Below are positions 6,724 through 36,200 of a stretch of DNA of 64,000 bases, piece after piece. The notes beneath the pieces are model-generated. The model was not told where the DNA came from. It did not search any database and was given only the letters and a program-made list of their open reading frames with translations. A program made the position numbers and the translations under genes. Source of the stretch: Trichoplax adhaerens (taxonomy: Eukaryota > Animalia > Placozoa); NCBI RefSeq assembly GCF_000150275.1, contig NW_002060949.1, positions 1,113,836-1,177,835 of the forward strand, read 5' to 3'. Within the stretch, counting starts at the first letter, position 1. Each line of letters starts with the position of its first letter.

Positions 6724-9700
6724 TCACTTTAACTTAATAAAACGATGCTGAAGCTCGTAGATACCAACAGAGATATTCTTTTTTGAATCATAATCTGCCC
6801 AATCCTAGAATTACATATTTTGAATGGAAAAGATACAGAAAAGAGATTTGAGAATAGGAAGGCACCTAATACGTATACGTAATCTATAGCACCCGCGTAT
6901 AAATTTTCTGAGCTTAAGAAAATTAAATCCATTGATACAACCACCTAACCAATTAGCAGTAGTGTATATATGTACCTCTTCCGATAAATTGATGTCCGTG
7001 AAAGCCGTGTTCGATTCGGAAGATACTGCTTGAAATCCAATCTGTCAATAAATTGGGTGACGTAATAAGATGACTATAAATTTAACTATTCCGTAGCTAA
7101 CCATTCCGTTCGTATGATGGAATATTATTGCGAATCGACACTTAACCGTTATAGCTCTTACTAAAACTATTACCGGTTCACATTGAATGATTCAGCTAGG
7201 TACAGCATAATGCCAGTAAGTTACAACTCTGTGATACTGTACTAGGTTTTTATATCATATCACTATCAATTGTTATCAATTATACTATAACTATGACTAA
7301 GATAGCGAGATAGCTTTTTAGTTATCGATAACAGATACATTGCTAAGGTAATAAACAGTAGCACAGTTACGTTACCGGTAATAAAGTTAAATATATCTAG
7401 CCTACCCTTGGTGAAAAATTTGTTGGCTCTATGCCTCGGCAATCGAAAGCTACAATGGTTTTGTATTTTCTGCTTTCGCTGTCTTCGATCTAAGTAGATA
7501 AATCATTTGTTTCAAAATATACCGCTCACATCAGGTAATTGATGCAAGAATGCAGGAAAAAGCCAACACAGTCGTCATGACGTGTTATATTAATAAGTTT
7601 AAAAATTTATGAATCCTCTTACGTTATAAGGTCCTACACTTCCTTCTATGATATCTAGAATGAAAAAGTAAAACATTTACACATACAGAATCAGTGTTGC
7701 CATTTTAATTTATCTCTGACAACAATAATTTCAATTCAGTTATAGTTATCTTTACCACATTATCAGCTGGTGTTTATTGCACATCGAATATCATATGCTC
7801 CTATTTCATACCTATGGAATTTTCGCGCGAACATAACTTGCATTTAATGACTAAATTGGCACTACCGCGACCACCTTTCAACGGCGACTTATCCTAATTT
7901 ATCCCAATATTTTGAAGAGTTAAATCAGGGTTAGTATGATCTAGTTAGATATTTTCTTCCATCATCAACAAAATTAGCTCCATTTCGAGATAGACATGCA
8001 CGATTGCATGTGTACTGAAGATAATGGAGGCAGAGATCTATCGAAACACTCGATTTAATATGAAATTTATTGATGTTAGTAATCTGTTGGCAATTTGACG
8101 TTTTTACATAGTAAATAAATGTTATCCGTACATCACAGAAATGGTAACAAAAAAATTTTCCAACATGCAATCAATAATATGATCTAATTCAATATACTGT
8201 CAAGTGATTATGATCTTTAAAGGCTCAATGGATAAATGAAAAATCCGGATACGTTAATCAAATAAGTGCTAATTTTTTAAAGCGTAAACATATCTAAGCA
8301 TCTTTACTACTATACGAGCAAACGCTAATTGGCTATTTATTTTATACAGTACATGATGTAAAGATCGTACTAGCTACTACTTATTTCACTTACATCTTGA
8401 CATACATACACCCATGATGTTTCATCGCCACAATTAAGGCATTTCAGCTGTGAAGTATTACGTTGAGGAAAAGTATTATTAACGGTAAGATATCAGCTAT
8501 AGAGTCAGAATAAAGCTATAGGATTAGGTTACTATTATAAAATTTATTAGAACAGAGTACTTACGTATAGAATGTACACAATATTAACTTTATTAAATTA
8601 AAAATATTGCATAATATTGCTACTACAACGAAACTCGAGCAATAGTTGTGAAACTTATTTTACGTCAAAAAATATTGAGCCCATGCTGAAATCAATAGGC
8701 TACAAGCTATTAACTTCGTAGTAGACGACGAGCTTTAATGTTGTCGTAATTAACGCAATCTAGACTAATGCGTGGATAACTTGACTGCAATAGTTACTAG
8801 AATAAATGGTTATTTAATAATATCTATACGATAATTTAACTATTTCCAAGTAATTGGACTCTTTAAATACTCCACTGTAATTACGATATAATTTTGTTAT
8901 TAGGTTATAATTAGCAAGCCTAACAAATACGTGATTAATACTAATAGTATACTTTTAAATACCACCGAAAGTCTTCACCAGATGCTATCAAATTGGTTAT
9001 ATTCTCCAAATCAGCTTGTATTTGAAGGCCAACTTTCTATAATTTTAAATGTGGACTTTAGTGATGGAAAGCTCTAGGCATCCAAGATTGTTTATTTCCA
9101 TATATCTTATATCATACTTATATATACCGTATACATTTGTATATCAGCACTAGTTATTGTATCATTATAATTATTAGGATTGGTATATATTACAGTAGTA
9201 CAATACAACAGAAGATACGAGTGTACTACATGGTACTCCATAAGCATAATATTATGCAGTTTCCTTCGGTGATATTTATAGGTAAAAAACATTCATGATC
9301 CTGCTTTGGTTAGAAGTACCTGTAACCTTTGTATTATACCATGTTTAATTTATATAGCTGATGCATAATTTTAGAGATAAATGGATTACTATCTATCTTG
9401 GTGGTATTAATGAACAGTAGTCTTTCTAATTTACCAGTAAATAAAGAGTATGACAAAATTATTATCACCCATGATGATGCGATTGTTGATTCATGATTTG
9501 CACTAGTAACATTACACGAGAACATACCAATAAAATAAGTATCTTAGCTCAATATGCCAAGTAATCAAAAGTGGTTACGGAATACCAATATTGATAATTC
9601 GTTCAAGATTGGAGAATTTCAAGACCTGTACTGTATGTGTAATTTATCCTAAAATTATCTATTTTATTGACTTTACTGGTGATACCGGTTCATTGCAATT

Positions 9701-10458: not shown

Positions 10459-11620
10459 AAATCTCACCCGCCGCTATACAGTATACACTGTATACAGTAC
10501 TTACACTACAGAAGGACGGATGGAAGAGGACAACACTGAGTTCAGTACAGACGTCAGTCCTAAATACAGTACTACTGACTACTGAGTGCTGTACTAACAG
10601 GGAAAGAATCAGTGTACTGTACAGTACAGTACTGTACACTGTAGAAATGATGTTACAGTATCGAAAAGGCAAAACCGTACATTACCGTACTGAGTACTGT
10701 ATTCCCTTTGTGATACTGGTATGTACTGTACAATGTACTGTACATACGGTACAGTACTGTACAGTACAGTACTGTAGCAGAAATTGAAAGTAGCGCCATA
10801 CAGTACAGTTGCTGTACAGTACTGTACAGCAACTACTGTAACTTCCATTTAGGCTATGGGTTACGATTCTGTATCAGCTATATCGACATTTTTTTTCTAC
10901 TGTATACTAAAATATATCAATTATTCTTTATACTAAATCCTATTAATATAAAATCTGTACAGTACTGTAGCAGAAAATGAAAGCAGCGTATATTGTAGGC
11001 TACGTACAGTACAGTACTGTATAGATGATGTACGGTACACTGTACAGTACTGAACTGTACTGCAGTACTGTACAGTACACTACTGTACACAGTCTACAGT
11101 GTACAGTACGGTGTACACAATCTCACCCGCCGTTGTACTGTACTCTACAGAAAAGACAGAAGGACAGTACTACAGTGCTGTACGCTACAGTATACTGTAG
11201 ATGGTATACTGTACACTGTACAGTACACAATCTCACCCGCTGTTGTACAGTACAGTACTGTACTGTTACACTGTACTGTACAGTACTCTACAGAAAAGAC
11301 AGAAGGACAATACAGTACTACAGTAGTTACGCTACAGTGTAGGTGATATGCACTGTCAGCTGTACAGTACTTTACACCGTACAGTACTATGTGATTATTT
11401 TCGATGTCTCCTCTTCGTTAAAAAATTAAAGTTGTATTCCGTTGAAATTCCTGTATAGTATTTATATATACCCATAGAATTATTAGGCTACAACCAAATA
11501 TAGAATTTATCTAGTTTGGGCTTGATTTAGCTTATACAATTATATGTTTTCGGGGTGCCATCGAAAATAATCACACTTGTACAGTACACAGTCTACAGTG
11601 TACAGTACAGTGTACACAAT
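10459..11620. repeat. Composite TACAG-filler array in the CZIB/UBE2W bidirectional promoter
   Basis: Anchor AATCTCACCCGC at about 10460, 11119, 11229; anchor CTACAGAAAAGACAGAAGGACA twice (plus a diverged copy near 10506); ACTGTAGCAGAAAWTGAAAGYAGCG at 10771 and 10964; anchors separated by variable TACAG/CTGTA filler. Starts about 45 bp from the CZIB ATG and ends about 335 bp from the UBE2W ATG. Confidence 0.85.
11390..11575. mobile_element. 186-bp MITE-like insertion with 17-bp perfect terminal inverted repeats
   Basis: TGTGATTATTTTCGATG at 11390-11406 and its reverse complement CATCGAAAATAATCACA at 11559-11575 enclose an AT-rich interior that interrupts the TACAG tract; no clear target-site duplication. 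Confidence 0.6.
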
Positions 11621-24482: not shown

Positions 24483-24655
24483 TTGTAGTATATAGTATGT
24501 AGATCGTTATTGCGAATGTATCCATTTTGCTGTATCCATTAGCACTAAAACGCTATCCTGTACAGTATTACTGTTGTAGTATATAGTATGTAAATCGTTA
24601 TGGCGAAGGTATCCATTTTACTGTATCCATTAGCACTAAAACGCTATCCTGTACA
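24483..24655. repeat. Two-copy tandem duplication, period 91 bp
   Basis: ttgtagtatatagtatgtaRatcgttatKgcgaaKgtatccattttRctgtatccattagcactaaaacgctatcctgtaca at 24483 and 24574 with about 4 substitutions. Confidence 0.9.
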
Positions 24656-24740: not shown

Positions 24741-24781
24741 ATCATGGACTACTAGAAGGAGACCTTCCAGTAGTCCATGGT
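24741..24781. promoter_or_regulatory. Head-to-head palindrome of the CATGGACTACTRGAAGG motif
   Basis: ATCATGGACTACTAGAAGG-AGA-CCTTCCAGTAGTCCATGGT (19-bp arms, 2 mismatches); the arm matches the anchor repeated four times at 32709-33120. Regulatory role is inferred from position. Confidence 0.55.
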
Positions 24782-24831: not shown

Positions 24832-25570
24832 ACACAGTACAGTACTGTACACTGTACTGTACAGTATTTCAACTTAGCTCGGGGTACTGTACTGTACTGT
24901 ACAGTACAGTGTACAGTACAAGTACCGTAGGATATTTCTGGAAGTTCATAGTGCAGTACTGTACAGTAGTGTACAGTACTGTATGGTTTCGTGGACGTGA
25001 TAATGTTGCATAACTTCATCACAAATAAAGGAAAGATTGATTTTACTGGAATCGGACAGTGATCGGACAGATTCAATGCAATCGGACAGTCTACCGTATG
25101 GTTTCGATTGACGTGATAATACGTACAGTATGGCATCAACTTGTGCAGCTTTTGTTTTGTTTCCATTACAGTACTGTACACTGTGTTTTACAGTACAATA
25201 TACAGTAGTATATGTACTGTACGCTGATCAGAGTGACGGATGGGTGGATAGTCTATCGTATGGTTTCGAATCTTTCGATTGACGTGATAATACAGTATGG
25301 CATCAACTTGTGCAGTAATGTGCAGCTTTTGTTTATACACTGTAAATTACAGTACAATGTACAGTACTTTATGTACTGTACACTGATCAGAATGTGACGT
25401 ACAGTATTACACAGTCTACCGTATGGTTTCGATTGACGTGATAATATGGCATCAACTTAGACCTGGCATCAACTTGTGCAGCTTTTGTTTCCATTACAGT
25501 ACTGTACCGTACAGTGTACAGTACAGTGCTGTACAGTGTACAGTACAGTGTTGTACAGTGTACTGTCACT
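24832..25570. repeat. Composite TACAG-filler array between the divergent Kv2 and CABLES genes
   Basis: Anchor GTATGGTTTCG(ATT)GACGTGATAAT at about 24981, 25097, 25258, 25421; GGCATCAACTTGTGCAG three times; CTGATCAGA twice; ATCGGACAG three times; period about 162 bp for the last three units; flanked and interleaved by TACAG/CTGTA filler. Confidence 0.85.
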
Positions 25571-30578: not shown

Positions 30579-31841
30579 CTATTGCACAGTTATTTCGAGT
30601 AATTTACCGTTTTCCGAACAATTATTATTAGTTTTACTAGTTACATCATGATTACAATTAATAGTTGAGTTCTGACTGCAACTGAGGTCACGATCATTCA
30701 ATAGTGAACTCTCGCTAAATGTATTGGAATCATCATCAAGATTGCCTACCACATCGAGATGATCATTTTCGAATAGAAAAACACCGGATCGTTTGGTGCC
30801 AAATTTCTTTCTAGCTTTCTGCCAGATATACCTACCCAAGATAACCGTATAATGCAAAAATGCACTTAAAAAACCATGCAGAAATACCCATAAACCACCG
30901 ACGTAAGCAAAAACTGTAATAAAAGTTAATATACCAATGTTATAGTTAAATGTGCAGAATGCGCTCTTGTCGGCAATATCGGCTGATATTGGATGATAGC
31001 AGTGTAGCGCTATATTGGATGCATTATCAGCGCATCGTTTCAATTCTGCATCAACACATTGATCACATAAGTAGCATTGAACAGATGGAGTTACTTGGCA
31101 TAAGAGTGAAATTTTCCACAAAGATTCAACGCATACCCAGGAAATATATAACCGACTAGTCCAAAAGATAAGACAAGTTGATGTAACCACAAATAATGCT
31201 ACTAAATTCCAGATAACATGAGCATTGCTATAGGTATACAGGGGAAAATGTGCTTTAAATTTAAAAGGTAATCGTCGCCTTTTAGTGAGGAATGTTGTTA
31301 AAACTAGGGCCATAGTAAAAGAAATGGAATAGATTTGTACAAAAATACCATTGAAACGAGTTTTAAAATATTTCCAGTCGAAATCGTGCTGATTCCATAA
31401 ATTAATATATAGATAGATGAGAGTAGTAAAAATTAATGAAATTGTCATTAACCAACTTGATCGACCAGTAAAGCGATTCCAAGAGCACACACCAAAGTAG
31501 AAGAAGAAAAAGAGCAATATTGGAGCGTCAGTAAATCGTCTAAATGTGTTGTCTGATTGTAGAAATTCTCGAACAAATATTCGCTCAGGTAATTCATGAT
31601 TGGCTAAGGCATCAAAAAGTGGCCGGCGACGTATAAATTCAATCATACCAACAACAACAAAAGTAAGGGCTATGGATGCATGAAGGCATTGCGAAATAAA
31701 TCGAATACTTCTACAGTCCCGTAAAGATCGGACAGGATAACAGCAACCAAGTTGAGACCATAGGCTCGGACGATGTTGTTGATTTCGATCATCATTGATT
31801 GAATTGATGCAGTCGGAGTCTGTGGTTAGCGTAACGGACAT
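30579..31841 (-). CDS. Uncharacterised single-exon multi-pass membrane protein, 420 aa, about 6 TM segments, Cys-rich loop
   Basis: 1263-nt uninterrupted ORF in AT-rich DNA with about six hydrophobic segments, an 8-Cys loop and an acidic Ser/Asn-rich tail; head-to-head with DDX31. No family recognised. Confidence 0.8.
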   Translation of the reverse strand: MSVTLTTDSDCINSINDDRNQQHRPSLWSQLGCCYPVRSLRDCRSIRFISQCLHASIALTFVVVGMIEFIRRRPLFDALANHELPERIFVREFLQSDNTFRRFTDAPILLFFFFYFGVCSWNRFTGRSSWLMTISLIFTTLIYLYINLWNQHDFDWKYFKTRFNGIFVQIYSISFTMALVLTTFLTKRRRLPFKFKAHFPLYTYSNAHVIWNLVALFVVTSTCLIFWTSRLYISWVCVESLWKISLLCQVTPSVQCYLCDQCVDAELKRCADNASNIALHCYHPISADIADKSAFCTFNYNIGILTFITVFAYVGGLWVFLHGFLSAFLHYTVILGRYIWQKARKKFGTKRSGVFLFENDHLDVVGNLDDDSNTFSESSLLNDRDLSCSQNSTINCNHDVTSKTNNNCSENGKLLEITVQ

Positions 31842-32481
31842 GATGAATGACTAACTACTAACAAGGACGAAGCGTTAATCTTAATATAACAAGTGCTACA
31901 TATATTCCATTCATTCATCGATGTCTACAAATAAGTTATGATTTTCAATGGAAAGGGCCATATCAGTCTCTCCAAGACGATGGTATGATTAGCAATGGTC
32001 AAAGCGATTTTGGGCTTGGAAAATTGTTCTAAATTGCGTAGATATCCTTAGCAAATCCACGATACGACAGTGTTGGATCGGTGTATCGTAGAATATACTT
32101 TTTCCTCGTTTAAACTCGCTTCAATTCTCAACAGCGAAGACTATCCGTGGATTAAATCTGCCATCAAAATTTGATATCACTCAATCAGGCTCAATTATTC
32201 GGATCTTGGTTGAAGATGGGAAGCGATGAATGACATCATTCAGTAATTAAGTAATAAATAAACAAACAACTGGCTCCAGAAGAACAACAAGTTACCAATG
32301 CCATTCGTCGGTGGCATTCCGTCGTCGTTCTCATTAATCCGATAATTCCTCTATTAATCTACATTTATTAAACCCAAATAGAGGGTCTCTAAGTAACGGT
32401 ATTCAGTAGAAGTTATTGCGTAATACACGACGCCGCAGCGCGGTACAGTACCGGTTCCCAATGTTTGTTACGTAAGCCAGA

Positions 32482-32488
32482 GGGGCGG
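32482..32488 (+). promoter_or_regulatory. GC box (Sp/KLF-type) in a GC-rich patch of the bidirectional promoter
   Basis: GGGGCGG in a locally GC-rich segment between two divergent genes; adjacent palindrome TTACGTAA at 32468-32475. Confidence 0.35.
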
Positions 32489-32569
32489 ACGGACGACCAG
32501 TGGCCATTGAGTGTAAATTAATGAGCAGGCTTACTATTTTCTGGTCATTCCACTATACGCTACCACTGA

Positions 32570-33170
32570 AACCATACTGTATACCACACTGTACAAAACC
32601 AACTCAGCCGCTATACTGTACTGTGTACAGCATTTGGATGAAAATCGTGGACAGAATGTGGACAGTACAGTATACTGTACTGTACACTGTAATTAGGAGT
32701 ACTGTACACTTTGTCACGGACCACTGGAAGGAAATACTTACAACAGGTACAGGCCAGGCCGTACTGTACTGTACAGCTGAGCACCTTTAGGGTCATACAG
32801 TAGAGCTCTGGATACTTTGTTACGGACTACTGGAAGGGAATAAATACTTACAGCAGGTAGTGTACAGTACTGTACACTGTAACAGTACAGTACTGTACTG
32901 TACTGTACAGCTGAGCACCTTTGGGATCATACTGTGTACAGTACACTTTGTCACGGACCACTGGAAGGAAATACTTGCAGCATGTAGTGTACACTGTACT
33001 GTGTACAGTACACTGTACTGTAACAGCTGAGCACCTTTGGGATCATACTGTACCGTACAGTACAGTACAGCACAGTAGAACTCTGTGCACTTTGTCACGG
33101 ACCACTGGAAGGAAATACTCACAGCAGGTACAGCTGAGCACCTTTGGGATCATACTGTAGAGTAGAGCTC
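32570..33170. repeat. Four-unit composite array with variable TACAG filler immediately upstream of DDX31
   Basis: Anchor A CTTTGTCACGGACCACTGGAAGGAAATACT at 32709, 32815, 32946, 33090; anchor B CAGCTGAGCACCTTTGGGATCATAC at 32774, 32908, 33024, 33131; A-to-B spacing 65, 93, 78, 41 bp, the difference being mostly TACAG/CTGTA words. Ends about 60 bp before the DDX31 ATG. Confidence 0.92.
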
Positions 33171-33228
33171 CATCTGGATTGCACAGGAACCGCCAGTCAG
33201 TCTACAGTCAAGAAATCTGCAAATCGTC

Positions 33229-36200
33229 ATGGCCGAAGAAGGTGATTGCGCTAATTTATTACTCAATATCACCTGTAATCCATCACCAATGGTAACAACA
33301 GCTGATCCTACAAGAAAGAAAGACAAATCCAAGGTGTAGTAGTTGGATGTATTAAGCTGTAGCTTTAAAGTAAGAGTGGCCATTGAATGAATCCACGTGA
33401 ATTCATTCATGGCAATCTGCATTGATACAACTAGAATATCATAGACTAATTGAAATCATTCAATCAGTGAAAAAAAATCTCGAAGAATAGCATTATAATT
33501 AGAAATTTGATTAATTCTTACTCCAAGTCAATGCTATCAAGAATGCATTGATAGTAAGATAGAGTGGAAATTGAACAGTTCTATTCTGTTACTATGAATT
33601 ATTAATTAATGAATTAATTTGTAGACACCGATCCACTGTCATCCACCAGTTGATTCATTCACTTGCATTGATACAACGGAGTGTCCTTGGTTATGCCTAT
33701 ACCCATGTGGGTATTTTCTAGTAGTTTATGGTAGAATCTACCTTATCTACCTCCACAGTAGGCTTCAACGCACGCGGATACATCTATCAATTGCAATAAT
33801 GTACTTGATCTACTCTTGAAAATAGCAGAATAATCTGAATAGAACGATGTACGGTATTCTTGATAATAAAGACACTGCACAACATAGCTTAGTCAGCAGT
33901 TCGTTCTTCATGCAATGCTTCAGATATCCTGCCCTTTATGGCTCACGTAGACGATCAAATTCATATAGTAAGAAATTTGACTCAATGAAAGTCGATGCTA
34001 TGAAGCCAAGAATAAATCATAGCCAAGTAGCTTAGATCTCCAATATAATGGATTATTTTATTTTAAGCCTAAAATTACTGTAATGCTTGAGTTGATTCAT
34101 TCATACTTGTAAGCGTGTATAAACTTTAAAAAATACTATTCCTCTGGACAACCCTTTAGTTGATTCATTCATGCTTAGAGAATACTATTCCACTGTACAA
34201 TCCTTTAGTTGATTCATTGGAGGCCATACAATTGCAGTACGAGTATGTCATAGCTTCTGCTAGAGTTACGATGTAGCGCTATAATGCAGTGCATTTAAGT
34301 ACTACAGCACTTCATCGTGCTATTCAGTGCAGTAATTGATTCATTCTAGATCATACAGTTACGTCTATTATTTATAACTAACATTTGCCATGCAGAGGTA
34401 TGATACAGCTAATTCCACTTTGAAATTCTTGTAGTCATTACGTTGATTGATGCTAAGTTATGAATTGCAATATCTAGGCATTTCTAGTCAGATTTAACAC
34501 ATCAGCCACAGTCAATATTTGATTATTTCCAAAGGATTATGATGGCTTAAACATTAGTATAGCTATATCACGCCAACACGTAGAAGCTATCCATAACTAG
34601 GAATTAAGTACACTCAGGCAGCTACAAATATACGTATGTCTTAACTATGCTAGGACGATTGATGTAATAATTGTAAAATTTATTAACGGCCGTAGTATTA
34701 TGATGTCAGTCGATCAAGCAGAAGTCATTTAGGTTTATTATATTCATACTGTAAATAACAATACAGTAATGTATGCACTTGTAGATCGTAACAACATTTT
34801 TGATTGGATCTAGGACGATTAATGGAATAAATCTGAAAGCCTATTAGTACTCAAGCTGGACAATTTTATCGGCGTAGATATTAATTTCAATTTCGTGTTC
34901 TGTGATTGATGAATAGGGTAGTAAAAGAGTTCGAACAAACAAAATGGTCACTAAACAACAAGACGTAGCAAAAACACGAACGACCATAGACACATCCAAT
35001 TTTAAAAGAAAATTAACAGACAATTCTTCTCGGGAAGATATGAACAAGGGAACTGTTCAATCCACTAAATGGGTAGGTCAATTACAGATTAGCTTGGTCA
35101 ATTCTTGGTAGAATATTGGTATAATTAACAGTCAGTATCAGATCTTGATATGATTAATCTATAATAACAATTTAGCCTAAGCATCGAGCGATTTCCTTGG
35201 TCTATAGATATTGTAATAGCAGCAGAATGATTGCTTGGTACTTGACACTATTCTTAGTTCGATATTTTAAGTGAACTAATATTACACCAAATAGAATTCA
35301 ATCCATTAAATAATTTATTAATTAAATGTATATACCAAAATGACATCAGATAAAATGATTACAATTAGTGCATAGATCACTAATTTCACTTATTTAATTC
35401 AATTTATAGATTTCTTCACTATTTACCAATAATCCAGAAATACCTCAAGTACAACGGTAATTATAATACACCTCTACCTGTGTCCTCAGAAAATTGAATT
35501 AAAAATGGTTATTTATATAATCTATGTTCTGTAAAATAATCATCAATAAATACGACCGTATACAGTCATTTCATCCTATCATTCTATCGTAGTTCGAAGA
35601 AGCTTAAAACTCATCATCAAGTCTTTACTGACGTCGAATTTACAAACGTCGCGCTATCACCCAGATTGGTAGGTAACGTATAACACAATCTTAAAATATA
35701 CATGTTAAAATATTTAACAGTAAATTACTAATGAGTTATATTTATTTACTAGCAATCATTTCTTGTGTAATTAGATATATAACTAATTATTTTACGATAT
35801 ACTTGAAAGCAGAAATTACATATTACTGCGTTACTTACTGTAATAAACTATGTGCAAATTGTACTATGCATTTCGTAGACAACTTTTTTCGTTACCCTGT
35901 AGGTATCACATTTAGAACAACACTTCCATTATCAGAAAATGACATGGTAAAATTTGTGACGTTAATACCAGTGTTCAACACTGCCTCATACACAAACTTT
36001 GATACCTTATTATTATAACAACTTACCTTAATAACTTAAAGTAATTAGCTACCGACCAATACCATTTGATATTCTTTTAGTGTACAAAGAAAAGCGATAC
36101 CGTCAATACTAAATGGACGTGATTGTCTTATCCAATCACAGACTGGAACAGGTACAATTTCTTGACGAAATAAATGATATATTTGCTATCTATAAATTGA

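What the first reader, a model, noticed from the sequence alone, without database searches (positions are those of the whole stretch)
32570..33170. Anchor-and-filler promoter array: TACAG words appear to be added independently at fixed sites in each repeat copy
Seen: four tandem units share two well-conserved anchors (CTTTGTCACGGACCACTGGAAGGAAATACT; CAGCTGAGCACCTTTGGGATCATAC). Unit 4 is nearly empty (CAGCAGG-TA-CAGCTG, spacing 41 bp). Units 1-3 have different fillers (spacing 65, 93, 78 bp) at the same GTAC site and again after CATAC, built mostly from TACAG/TACTG/TACAC/TGTAC words in mixed orientation. This is not an ordinary microsatellite, because there is no fixed period and orientation switches. 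Inference: a local process such as fold-back or template-switch synthesis seeded at GTAC palindromes, or enzyme-driven addition, keeps writing these words into promoters, or selection maintains them for a binding factor. The empty and filled alleles side by side make this the best place to study it, and it is the strongest candidate for an undescribed system here. Caveat: I recall placozoan chromatin-conformation work describing promoter hubs marked by a motif linked to Mutator-type inverted repeats; that must be compared before claiming novelty.
Basis: partly seen in the sequence, partly recalled or inferred. Interest (0 to 1): 0.85.

Follow-up and report, generated by a model that had tools for sequence, protein, structure and literature searches.

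The report
Known Trichoplax promoter repeat, locally duplicated
The four repeat copies with differently filled gaps are real, but the filler is the (ACAGT)n/GTAC promoter repeat of Trichoplax adhaerens published in 2010, sitting inside a small local tandem duplication; nothing here shows an enzyme writing words into promoters.

Summary
Four tandem units (101-144 bp) share two near-invariant blocks, with start-to-start spacings of exactly 65, 93, 78 and 41 bp. The gaps are filled with GTAC-based words.

The genome is Trichoplax adhaerens. The array lies in the untranscribed ~950-bp spacer between TRIADDRAFT_57894 (- strand) and an SPB4/DDX31-like DEAD-box helicase gene (+ strand).

The filler is not new. 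It is the promoter-associated (ACAGT)n microsatellite described in 2010 and tied to promoter looping and insulation in 2025-2026. This scan had already noted it on other DNA of this genome.

The "orientation switches" are only A or T at the fifth base of GTACW, because GTAC is a palindrome.

- Independent short-read contigs from two lineages reproduce the array pieces exactly, so it is not an assembly artefact.
- The fillers are not hypervariable. The changes seen are mainly 5-nt steps, plus one 7-nt insertion.
- A genome-wide test found no excess of perfect palindromes, which argues against fold-back synthesis.
- Two other promoters in the window show the same anchor-and-filler layout.

Best reading: the tracts themselves mediate local duplication and then change by slippage. 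One point remains unexplained: the fifth base is W over S by 28:1, yet orientation is mixed in 61.5% of tracts. This suggests that an unknown GTAC-reading factor selects the tracts.

The parts
30579..32233 (-). Upstream divergent gene TRIADDRAFT_57894. The single-exon ORF is 30579-31841, and the transcribed leader reaches about 32233.
   Evidence: 99% identity to P0001. RNA contigs cover 31900-32233 and stop there.
32234..33185 (.). Divergent intergenic spacer that holds the array. No locus-specific RNA contig lies on it.
   Evidence: In one search, RNA run X19 has locus-specific contigs only up to 32233 and from 33186 onward.
32484..32497 (+). GGACGGAC-type (ACGG-repeat) word, the other motif class reported for this species.
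   Evidence: Sequence; positions. GGACGGA is about 12-fold enriched near tracts, on small counts. PMC12817080 names repeating ACGG and ACAGT motifs.
32571..32708 (.). Degenerate GTAC-word tracts directly upstream of unit 1. One tract abuts the start of anchor A.
   Evidence: the 'pre' line.
32709..32814 (+). Unit 1: A 32709-32738, link 32739-32746, tract 1 32747-32773 (27 nt, with a non-GTAC insert), B 32774-32798, C 32799-32814. Second site empty.
32815..32945 (+). Unit 2: diverged A 32815-32848, link 32849-32856, tract 1 32857-32907 (51 nt), B 32908-32932, tract 2 32933-32945. Block C absent.
32946..33089 (+). Unit 3: A 32946-32975, link 32976-32983, tract 1 32984-33023 (40 nt, period 7/12), B 33024-33048, tract 2 33049-33073, C 33074-33089.
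   Evidence: A second haplotype carries a 5-nt deletion within 33030-33110, plus 33071 C>T and 33080 A>G.
33090..33183 (+). Unit 4: A 33090-33119, link 33120-33127, 'empty' site 33128-33130 (GTA only), B 33131-33155, a short remnant, then C 33161-33183.
   Evidence: A second haplotype carries a 7-nt insertion behind 33130 and 5 substitutions.
33186..33334 (+). First exon of the downstream DEAD-box rRNA helicase gene (ATG at 33229).
   Evidence: An RNA contig starts at 33186 and ends at the donor near 33334. Later exons hit DEAD, Helicase_C and CTE_SPB4 (1.1e-18).

Best explanation
This is the divergent promoter spacer of two Trichoplax adhaerens genes. It carries a four-copy local tandem duplication. 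Each unit consists of two conserved unique blocks (A and B, plus a weaker C) separated by two tracts of the species' well-known promoter repeat (GTACW)n = (ACAGT)n.

Inferred origin: tracts lying 100-150 bp apart act as short dispersed repeats. Misaligned replication or unequal exchange between them duplicates the unique DNA in between. Unit borders therefore fall inside tracts, and tract lengths differ from the outset.

Inferred later change: the tracts change faster than their flanks by slippage in 5-nt steps, and by larger deletions between repeated GTACAG words. The 'empty' site of unit 4 is exactly what such a deletion of a unit-1-like tract would leave.

Blocks A and B stay fixed, probably because they are functional promoter elements. 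A contains a motif that is dispersed genome-wide.

The tracts themselves most likely serve as multi-site binding arrays for a still unknown GTAC-reading factor involved in open promoters, insulation and promoter hubs. This functional part comes from the literature and from the repeat grammar; it is not shown at this locus.
For: - Identity of the organism and the flanking genes.
- Array anatomy.
- Tracts are genome-wide: 6758 (GTACW)3GTAC sites against 0 for the reversed control.
- PMC2871265: ACAGT is the dominant microsatellite, and 54% of copies lie within 1 kb upstream of genes.
- PMC12817080: a repeating ACAGT motif is associated with insulation.
- PMC12221973: promoter hubs carry a motif.
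- Step changes are seen directly: a second haplotype at about half depth in all three DNA runs has a 5-nt deletion in the unit-3 tract, and one lineage has a private 5-nt deletion at 32575.
- A tract directly abuts the start of unit 1, and the unit borders lie in tract 2.
- The same layout occurs at 11119-11310 and 25086-25540.
- Variable columns: 4 of 55 in A+B against 4 of 8 in the link (Fisher p = 0.0066).
- The core of A, GGACYACTRGAAGG, occurs 41 times against 2 for the control genome-wide.
- Grammar: the fifth base is W at 6758 sites and S at 239.
Against: - The polarity of the empty site (loss or never filled) cannot be set without an outgroup.
- The fillers of units 1-3 are no more alike than unrelated tracts, so their common descent is not shown.
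- Pure slippage predicts runs in one orientation, but 61.5% of four-GTAC windows are mixed. S at the fifth base is far rarer than an A/T switch, which point mutation plus slippage alone does not explain.
- Only assembled contigs were available. These cannot reveal somatic length variation, and none spans the whole array.
- No chromatin or binding data were examined here.
Confidence: 0.7

Rival explanations
1. Active or templated writing: fold-back or template-switch synthesis seeded at GTAC palindromes, or an enzyme, keeps adding words at fixed sites independently in each copy.
For: - Mixed orientation is the rule (61.5%).
- A/T switches are far commoner than G or C at the fifth base.
- The fillers differ completely while A and B are identical between units 3 and 4.
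- The fillers can form hairpins of -6 to -16 kcal/mol, whereas the anchors do not fold.
Against: - Hairpin-templated correction should enrich perfect palindromes. Among one-switch five-GTAC strings the palindromic ones (193 and 129) are not commoner than the non-palindromic ones (212, 234, 190, 188).
- Hairpin energies are hardly better than shuffles (z -0.4 to -2.3).
- The tracts that could be laid are identical in two lineages whose flanks differ by about 0.4%, and the changes seen are mainly single 5-nt steps.
- No candidate enzyme is known.
Confidence: 0.07
2. Transposon origin: the words are remnants of terminal inverted repeats of Mutator-type or other small elements inserted into the promoter, as PMC12221973 proposes for placozoan hub promoters.
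For: - PMC12221973 reports Mutator elements in hub promoters whose TIRs resemble the anchor motif.
- The core of A matches one arm of a dispersed 45-60-nt palindromic element (window 24741-24781).
- An earlier scan note reports P-like MITEs beside such tracts.
Against: - The 83-nt unit occurs only at this locus.
- Only 4 MULE-domain fragments exist in the genome, and none has GTACW nearby in the flanks fetched.
- PMC2871265 finds 0.13% TE content, 6 MuDR copies and no active TE.
- The Mutator calls came from EDTA. From my own knowledge, EDTA calls TIR elements by structure. A simple TIR plus 9-bp duplication scan yields 28 candidates in this window, 27 of them built of GTAC words and 7 inside the array, against none in five shuffles under the stricter settings. 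Such calls can therefore arise from the tracts alone.
- B is not dispersed (351 against 242).
Confidence: 0.1
3. Assembly artefact: the array or its unequal fillers result from mis-assembly of a repeat-rich region in the 2008 draft.
For: No contig spans the whole array. The stretch 32971-32992 is not covered by any listed piece.
Against: Independent short-read contigs from three studies and two lineages match exactly across 32713-32812, 32734-32908, 32906-32970, 33024-33110 and 33105-33215, which covers most junctions.
Confidence: 0.03

Closest known systems
(ACAGT)n promoter-associated microsatellite of Trichoplax adhaerens (Wang et al. 2010, PMC2871265)
   Same: Same organism, same pentamer, same position within 1 kb upstream of genes, and the same genome-wide abundance (thousands of sites).
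   Different: That paper counted it as a plain pentanucleotide repeat. Here the fifth base is A or T in mixed order (61.5% of windows), 7-nt steps also occur, and the tracts sit inside a local tandem duplication with conserved unique blocks.
Placozoan promoter-hub / loop-anchor motif and 'Mutator TIR' association (Kim et al. 2025, PMC12221973); repeating ACGG and ACAGT motifs (PMC12817080)
   Same: A motif marking the promoters of broadly expressed genes in this species. The downstream gene here is a housekeeping-type rRNA helicase, and both ACAGT tracts and an ACGG-type word lie in this spacer.
   Different: The letters of the published motif are not in the text held, so identity could not be tested. 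No Micro-C or ATAC data were overlaid. The Mutator link looks doubtful from the structural scan done here.
Minisatellite birth by slippage or unequal exchange between short flanking direct repeats, with a microsatellite inside the unit (general model; recalled from Haber and Louis 1998, not checked here)
   Same: The units are bordered by short repeated words, their lengths are unequal because of internal simple-repeat tracts, and there are few copies.
   Different: Here the bordering repeats belong to a genome-wide promoter element, and the unique blocks appear to be under constraint.
Microsatellite-reading promoter and tethering factors such as Drosophila GAGA factor on (GA)n (my own knowledge, as an analogy)
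   Same: Short tandem words clustered at promoters that are associated with open chromatin and promoter contacts.
   Different: No reader protein is known for GTACW. The plant GTAC-binding SBP domain was not found in this genome, but that search matched none of its 14 control genomes either, so it is uninformative.

Membership tests
Trichoplax (ACAGT)n promoter microsatellite | Tandem ACAGT/ACTGT pentamers | tested here: met
   TRF reports period 5 with 9.8 copies at 32857-32908 and 6.4 copies at 33046-33077. GTAC cores are spaced by 1 nt.
Trichoplax (ACAGT)n promoter microsatellite | Lies within about 1 kb upstream of a gene | tested here: met
   The array ends about 60 nt before the ATG at 33229 and about 15 nt before the start of the RNA contig at 33186.
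Trichoplax (ACAGT)n promoter microsatellite | Member of a genome-wide, highly abundant class | tested here: met
   6758 (GTACW)3GTAC sites against 0 for the control. Four further clusters lie in the window.
Local tandem repeat (minisatellite) | Head-to-tail copies of one unit, specific to the locus | tested here: met
   Four copies. The unit is found nowhere else in the genome. TRF does not call the long period because of the large internal length differences.
Mutator (MULE) transposon or MITE | Terminal inverted repeats with 9-11-bp target duplication around non-repeat internal sequence | tested here: inconclusive
   The only TIR-plus-duplication candidates are built from GTAC words themselves.
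Mutator (MULE) transposon or MITE | A related transposase present in the genome, with matching ends | tested here: not met
   Four MULE-domain fragments on small contigs, with no GTACW in the flanks fetched.
Placozoan promoter-hub anchor (Kim et al. 2025) | Match to the published motif and a Micro-C loop anchor at the site | not testable with these tools
   The motif logo is given only in figures. No contact maps are available.
Quasi-palindrome / fold-back templated mutation | Excess of perfect inverted symmetry in the products | tested here: not met
   Palindromic strings: AATT 193, TTAA 129. Non-palindromic strings: AAAT 212, ATTT 234, TAAA 190, TTTA 188.
Known structured RNA gene (for example a spliced-leader or small RNA array) | Rfam match, or presence in RNA | tested here: not met
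   Only sub-threshold microRNA-like noise in Rfam. RNA contigs do not cover blocks A or B.

The most novel reading that the evidence does not exclude
GTACW tracts are not passive microsatellites. They are produced or renewed by a strand-symmetric process seeded at GTAC, such as template switching or footprints of a nuclease or transposase that cuts at GTAC, and then kept by a GTAC-reading architectural factor. The paralogous empty and filled sites at this locus would then be snapshots of that process. The 28:1 preference for A/T at the fifth base, together with random orientation, is what such a process or strong selection would give, and plain slippage would not.
Probability: 0.07. Interest if true: 0.8.

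Novelty: new member of a known kind. Interest (0 to 1): 0.3.

Why it matters
The repeat class is already known, so the locus adds no new system. It does offer a compact natural series: four paralogous copies, two haplotypes and two lineages. On such a series the rate and step size of tract change, and the need for the conserved blocks, could be measured.

Two results may be of use to people working on placozoan promoter hubs:
- The repeat grammar points to selection by an unknown GTAC-spacing reader. The spacing between GTAC cores is fixed, the fifth base is A or T in either order, and G or C is almost excluded.
- Structure-based 'Mutator' calls can arise from the self-complementary tracts alone, so the reported link to transposons should be rechecked.

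Tried and rejected
- **Orthologous locus in other placozoans.** The cross-species test was therefore not done.
- **Reads.** Only Logan contigs were served, with no raw or long reads, so somatic heterogeneity could not be assessed.
- **Tiny-intron idea.** The fillers are bounded by GT...AG-like words, but no RNA contig covers or splices the array, so this was rejected.
- **Spliced-leader or small-RNA array.** Rejected.
- **Filler homology from shared edges.** I first read the shared left edge of units 2 and 3 as shared descent. A control against unrelated tracts showed the similarity is not above background, so I withdrew the claim.
- **B as a degenerate inverted partner of A.** No inverted pair was reported between the anchor blocks, and B is not dispersed. 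Rejected.
- **SBP (plant GTAC-binding) domain as reader.** No match, but the search also matched none of its 14 control genomes, so it is uninformative.
- **Multiple alignment of units.** MAFFT misplaced unit 4, so anchors were used to align the units by hand.
- **Bacterial promoter scan.** Irrelevant for a eukaryote.

Full report
**What is there.** The window belongs to a 105.6-Mb, 1414-contig genome with 33% G+C. The 420-aa ORF at 30579-31841 (- strand) is 99% identical to TRIADDRAFT_57894 of Trichoplax adhaerens.

- The 30-nt block A is exact at 32709, 32946 and 33090. A diverged copy sits at 32815.
- The 25-nt block B occurs four times, at 32774, 32908, 33024 and 33131.
- Neither block appears in any shuffle.

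Each unit reads: A, an 8-nt link, a first variable tract (27, 51, 40 or 3 nt), B, a second variable tract, then a weaker third block C that is absent from unit 2.

The region holds 32 GTAC, against 10.8 +/- 2.5 in dinucleotide shuffles.

**Setting.** Contigs of an RNA library lie on 31900-32233 and again from 33186 onward, but not on blocks A or B. The array therefore sits in an apparently untranscribed spacer of about 950 bp between two divergent genes. It ends about 15 nt before the first RNA contig of the + strand gene.

That gene starts at ATG 33229. Its later exons hit DEAD, Helicase_C and the SPB4-type C-terminal extension (1.1e-18), so it is a nucleolar rRNA helicase of the DDX31/SPB4 kind. 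No Rfam family matches the array. This rules out a tiny-intron reading and a small-RNA-gene reading.

**The filler is a known repeat.** GTAC cores in the fillers are separated by one base (A or T) or by three, which gives the periods 5 and 7 that TRF reports. Because GTAC is its own reverse complement, GTACA on one strand is GTACT on the other.

The pattern (GTACW)3GTAC occurs 6758 times in the genome and its reversed control never. In the window the tracts cluster at five intergenic places.

Prior literature:
- Wang et al. 2010 (PMC2871265) described (ACAGT)n as the dominant microsatellite of this species. It makes up 78% of pentanucleotide repeats, and 54% of copies lie within 1 kb upstream of genes.
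- Kim et al. 2025 (PMC12221973) tied a promoter motif to chromatin-loop hubs.
- A 2026 paper (PMC12817080) names repeating ACGG and ACAGT motifs associated with insulation.
- Earlier notes of this scan on other parts of the genome reached the same identification. I checked the papers they pointed to myself.

**Not an artefact, and not hypervariable.** Short-read contigs from three studies and two lineages were laid on the region. The second lineage differs by about 0.4% in the flanks. The contigs reproduce 32713-32812, 32734-32908, 32906-32970, 33024-33110 and 33105-33215 without a single difference.

All three DNA runs also carry a second haplotype at about half depth. It differs in three ways:
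- a 5-nt deletion in the unit-3 tract;
- two substitutions;
- at the "empty" site of unit 4, a 7-nt insertion that is not a GTAC word.

One lineage has a private 5-nt deletion at 32575. So the tracts do change, mostly by one repeat unit, but over this time scale they are largely the same.

**Independent writing, or descent with change?** I first took the shared left edge of the fillers of units 2 and 3 as a sign of common descent. A control changed that view: the fillers are no more alike than unrelated tracts from elsewhere. For units 2-3, 12 of 116 controls scored as well; for the other pairs, 52 and 88 of 116 did. Common descent is therefore neither shown nor excluded.

What can be said:
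- The empty site of unit 4 is exactly what remains if a unit-1-like tract is deleted between its two terminal GTACAG words.
- A tract abuts the start of unit 1, and the unit borders lie within the second tract.
- The same anchor-and-filler layout occurs at two other promoters in this window. One has anchors 22 against 55 nt apart (starts at 11119 and 11229). The other is a three-copy array at 25086-25540.

Words are not written into repeat copies. Instead, closely spaced tracts act as short repeats that mediate local duplication of the unique DNA between them, leaving tracts of unequal length at the junctions. Slippage then changes them further. This is inference, not a demonstrated mechanism.

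**The anchors.** A and B have 4 variable columns in 55, while the 8-nt link has 4 in 8 (p = 0.0066). Block C also carries indels. B is flanked by tracts on both sides yet is identical in three units. The array therefore looks old, with A and B under constraint, rather than young.

The core of A, GGACYACTRGAAGG, is a dispersed motif. It has 41 exact sites against 2 for the control, and 1933 against 899 with two mismatches allowed. It often forms a 45-60-nt palindromic element and often lies next to tracts. B is specific to this locus.

**Test of the fold-back idea.** The fillers can form hairpins as single strands (-6 to -16 kcal/mol), but hardly better than shuffles. The anchors do not fold.

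If hairpin-templated synthesis shaped the tracts, perfect palindromes should be in excess. Among five-GTAC strings with one A/T switch:

| String type | Counts |
|---|---|
| Palindromic | AATT 193, TTAA 129 |
| Non-palindromic | AAAT 212, ATTT 234, TAAA 190, TTTA 188 |

There is no excess.

**What remains odd.** Only 38.5% of four-GTAC windows are in one orientation (2599 of 6758). In a 264-kb sample, neighbouring fifth bases are the same in 46% of cases against 50% expected.

G or C at that position is 28 times rarer than A or T (239 against 6758). Point mutation would favour transitions, and slippage would favour uniform runs, so neither explains this grammar. Selection for GTAC cores at 5-bp spacing by a reader protein is the most economical account. 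It agrees with the suggestion of an architectural factor in PMC12221973, but it is untested. The plant GTAC-binding SBP domain was not detected, but that search matched no control genome either, so it is uninformative.

**The Mutator link.**
- The 2025 paper annotated transposons with EDTA. From my own knowledge, EDTA calls TIR elements by structure.
- The genome has only four MULE-domain fragments, none with GTACW nearby in the flanks fetched.
- The 2010 survey found 0.13% transposon content.
- A simple scan for inverted arms plus a 9-bp flanking duplication gives 4 strict and 28 relaxed candidates in this window. Of the relaxed set, 27 are built from GTAC words and 7 lie inside the array. 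Five shuffles of the window, scanned with the strict settings, gave none.

The transposon label may therefore be a by-product of the tracts' self-complementarity. This is a lead to check, not a finding.

**Limits.**
- Only assembled contigs, not reads, were available.
- The published motif logo is not in the text held, so its identity with GTACW could not be tested.

**Verdict.** The locus is a further example, with a tidy paralogous series. The writing mechanism is unsupported.

Noticed in passing
window 24741-24781; also L010, L025, L026, L031, L034, L039: A dispersed short palindromic element. Its arms are close to catGGACTACTAGAAGA, with a 3-30-nt centre and a total length of about 45-60 nt. 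It often sits beside GTAC tracts, and one arm matches the core of anchor A. No clear target duplication was seen by eye. Its nature is open: a small mobile element, a palindromic binding site or a hairpin RNA.
   Followed up: partly
L007 (C1408:2714800-2717800), L027 (C1394:945900-948100), L008, L009: Regular minisatellites with six copies of 313 or 330 bp (L007, L027) or two to three copies of about 240 bp (L008, L009). Each unit carries the same GGACTACTGGAAGG-type word. A sizeable share of the exact genome-wide hits to that word therefore come from arrays.
   Followed up: partly
window 11119-11310 and 25086-25540: Two more promoter-side local duplications with conserved anchors and GTAC tracts of unequal length. 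In the first, the anchor starts are 22 and 55 nt apart. The second is a three-copy array with units of about 154-171 bp.
   Followed up: partly
window 32484-32497 and 10514: GGACGGAC-type words (the 'ACGG' repeat class named in PMC12817080) lie in the same spacers as the tracts. GGACGGA is about 12-fold enriched within 300 bp of tracts, but the counts are small (6 against 5).
   Followed up: partly
genome-wide counts: The two palindromic junction types are unequal. A-then-T (centre AGTACT) strings number 193, against 129 for T-then-A (centre TGTACA). Unexplained.
   Followed up: no
window 32233: The RNA contig that ends at 32233 carries 15 further letters that do not match the adjacent genome and have no splice signal at the border. 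This could be an upstream exon, an assembly chimera or something else.
   Followed up: no
window 33105-33215: Two haplotypes at roughly equal depth are shared by both lineages. They differ by a 7-nt insertion and five substitutions within 60 nt, which fits old heterozygosity kept in clonal lines.
   Followed up: no
window 24483-24655: A 91-bp tandem repeat with 1.9 copies and 95% identity, just upstream of the palindromic element and its tract cluster.
   Followed up: no
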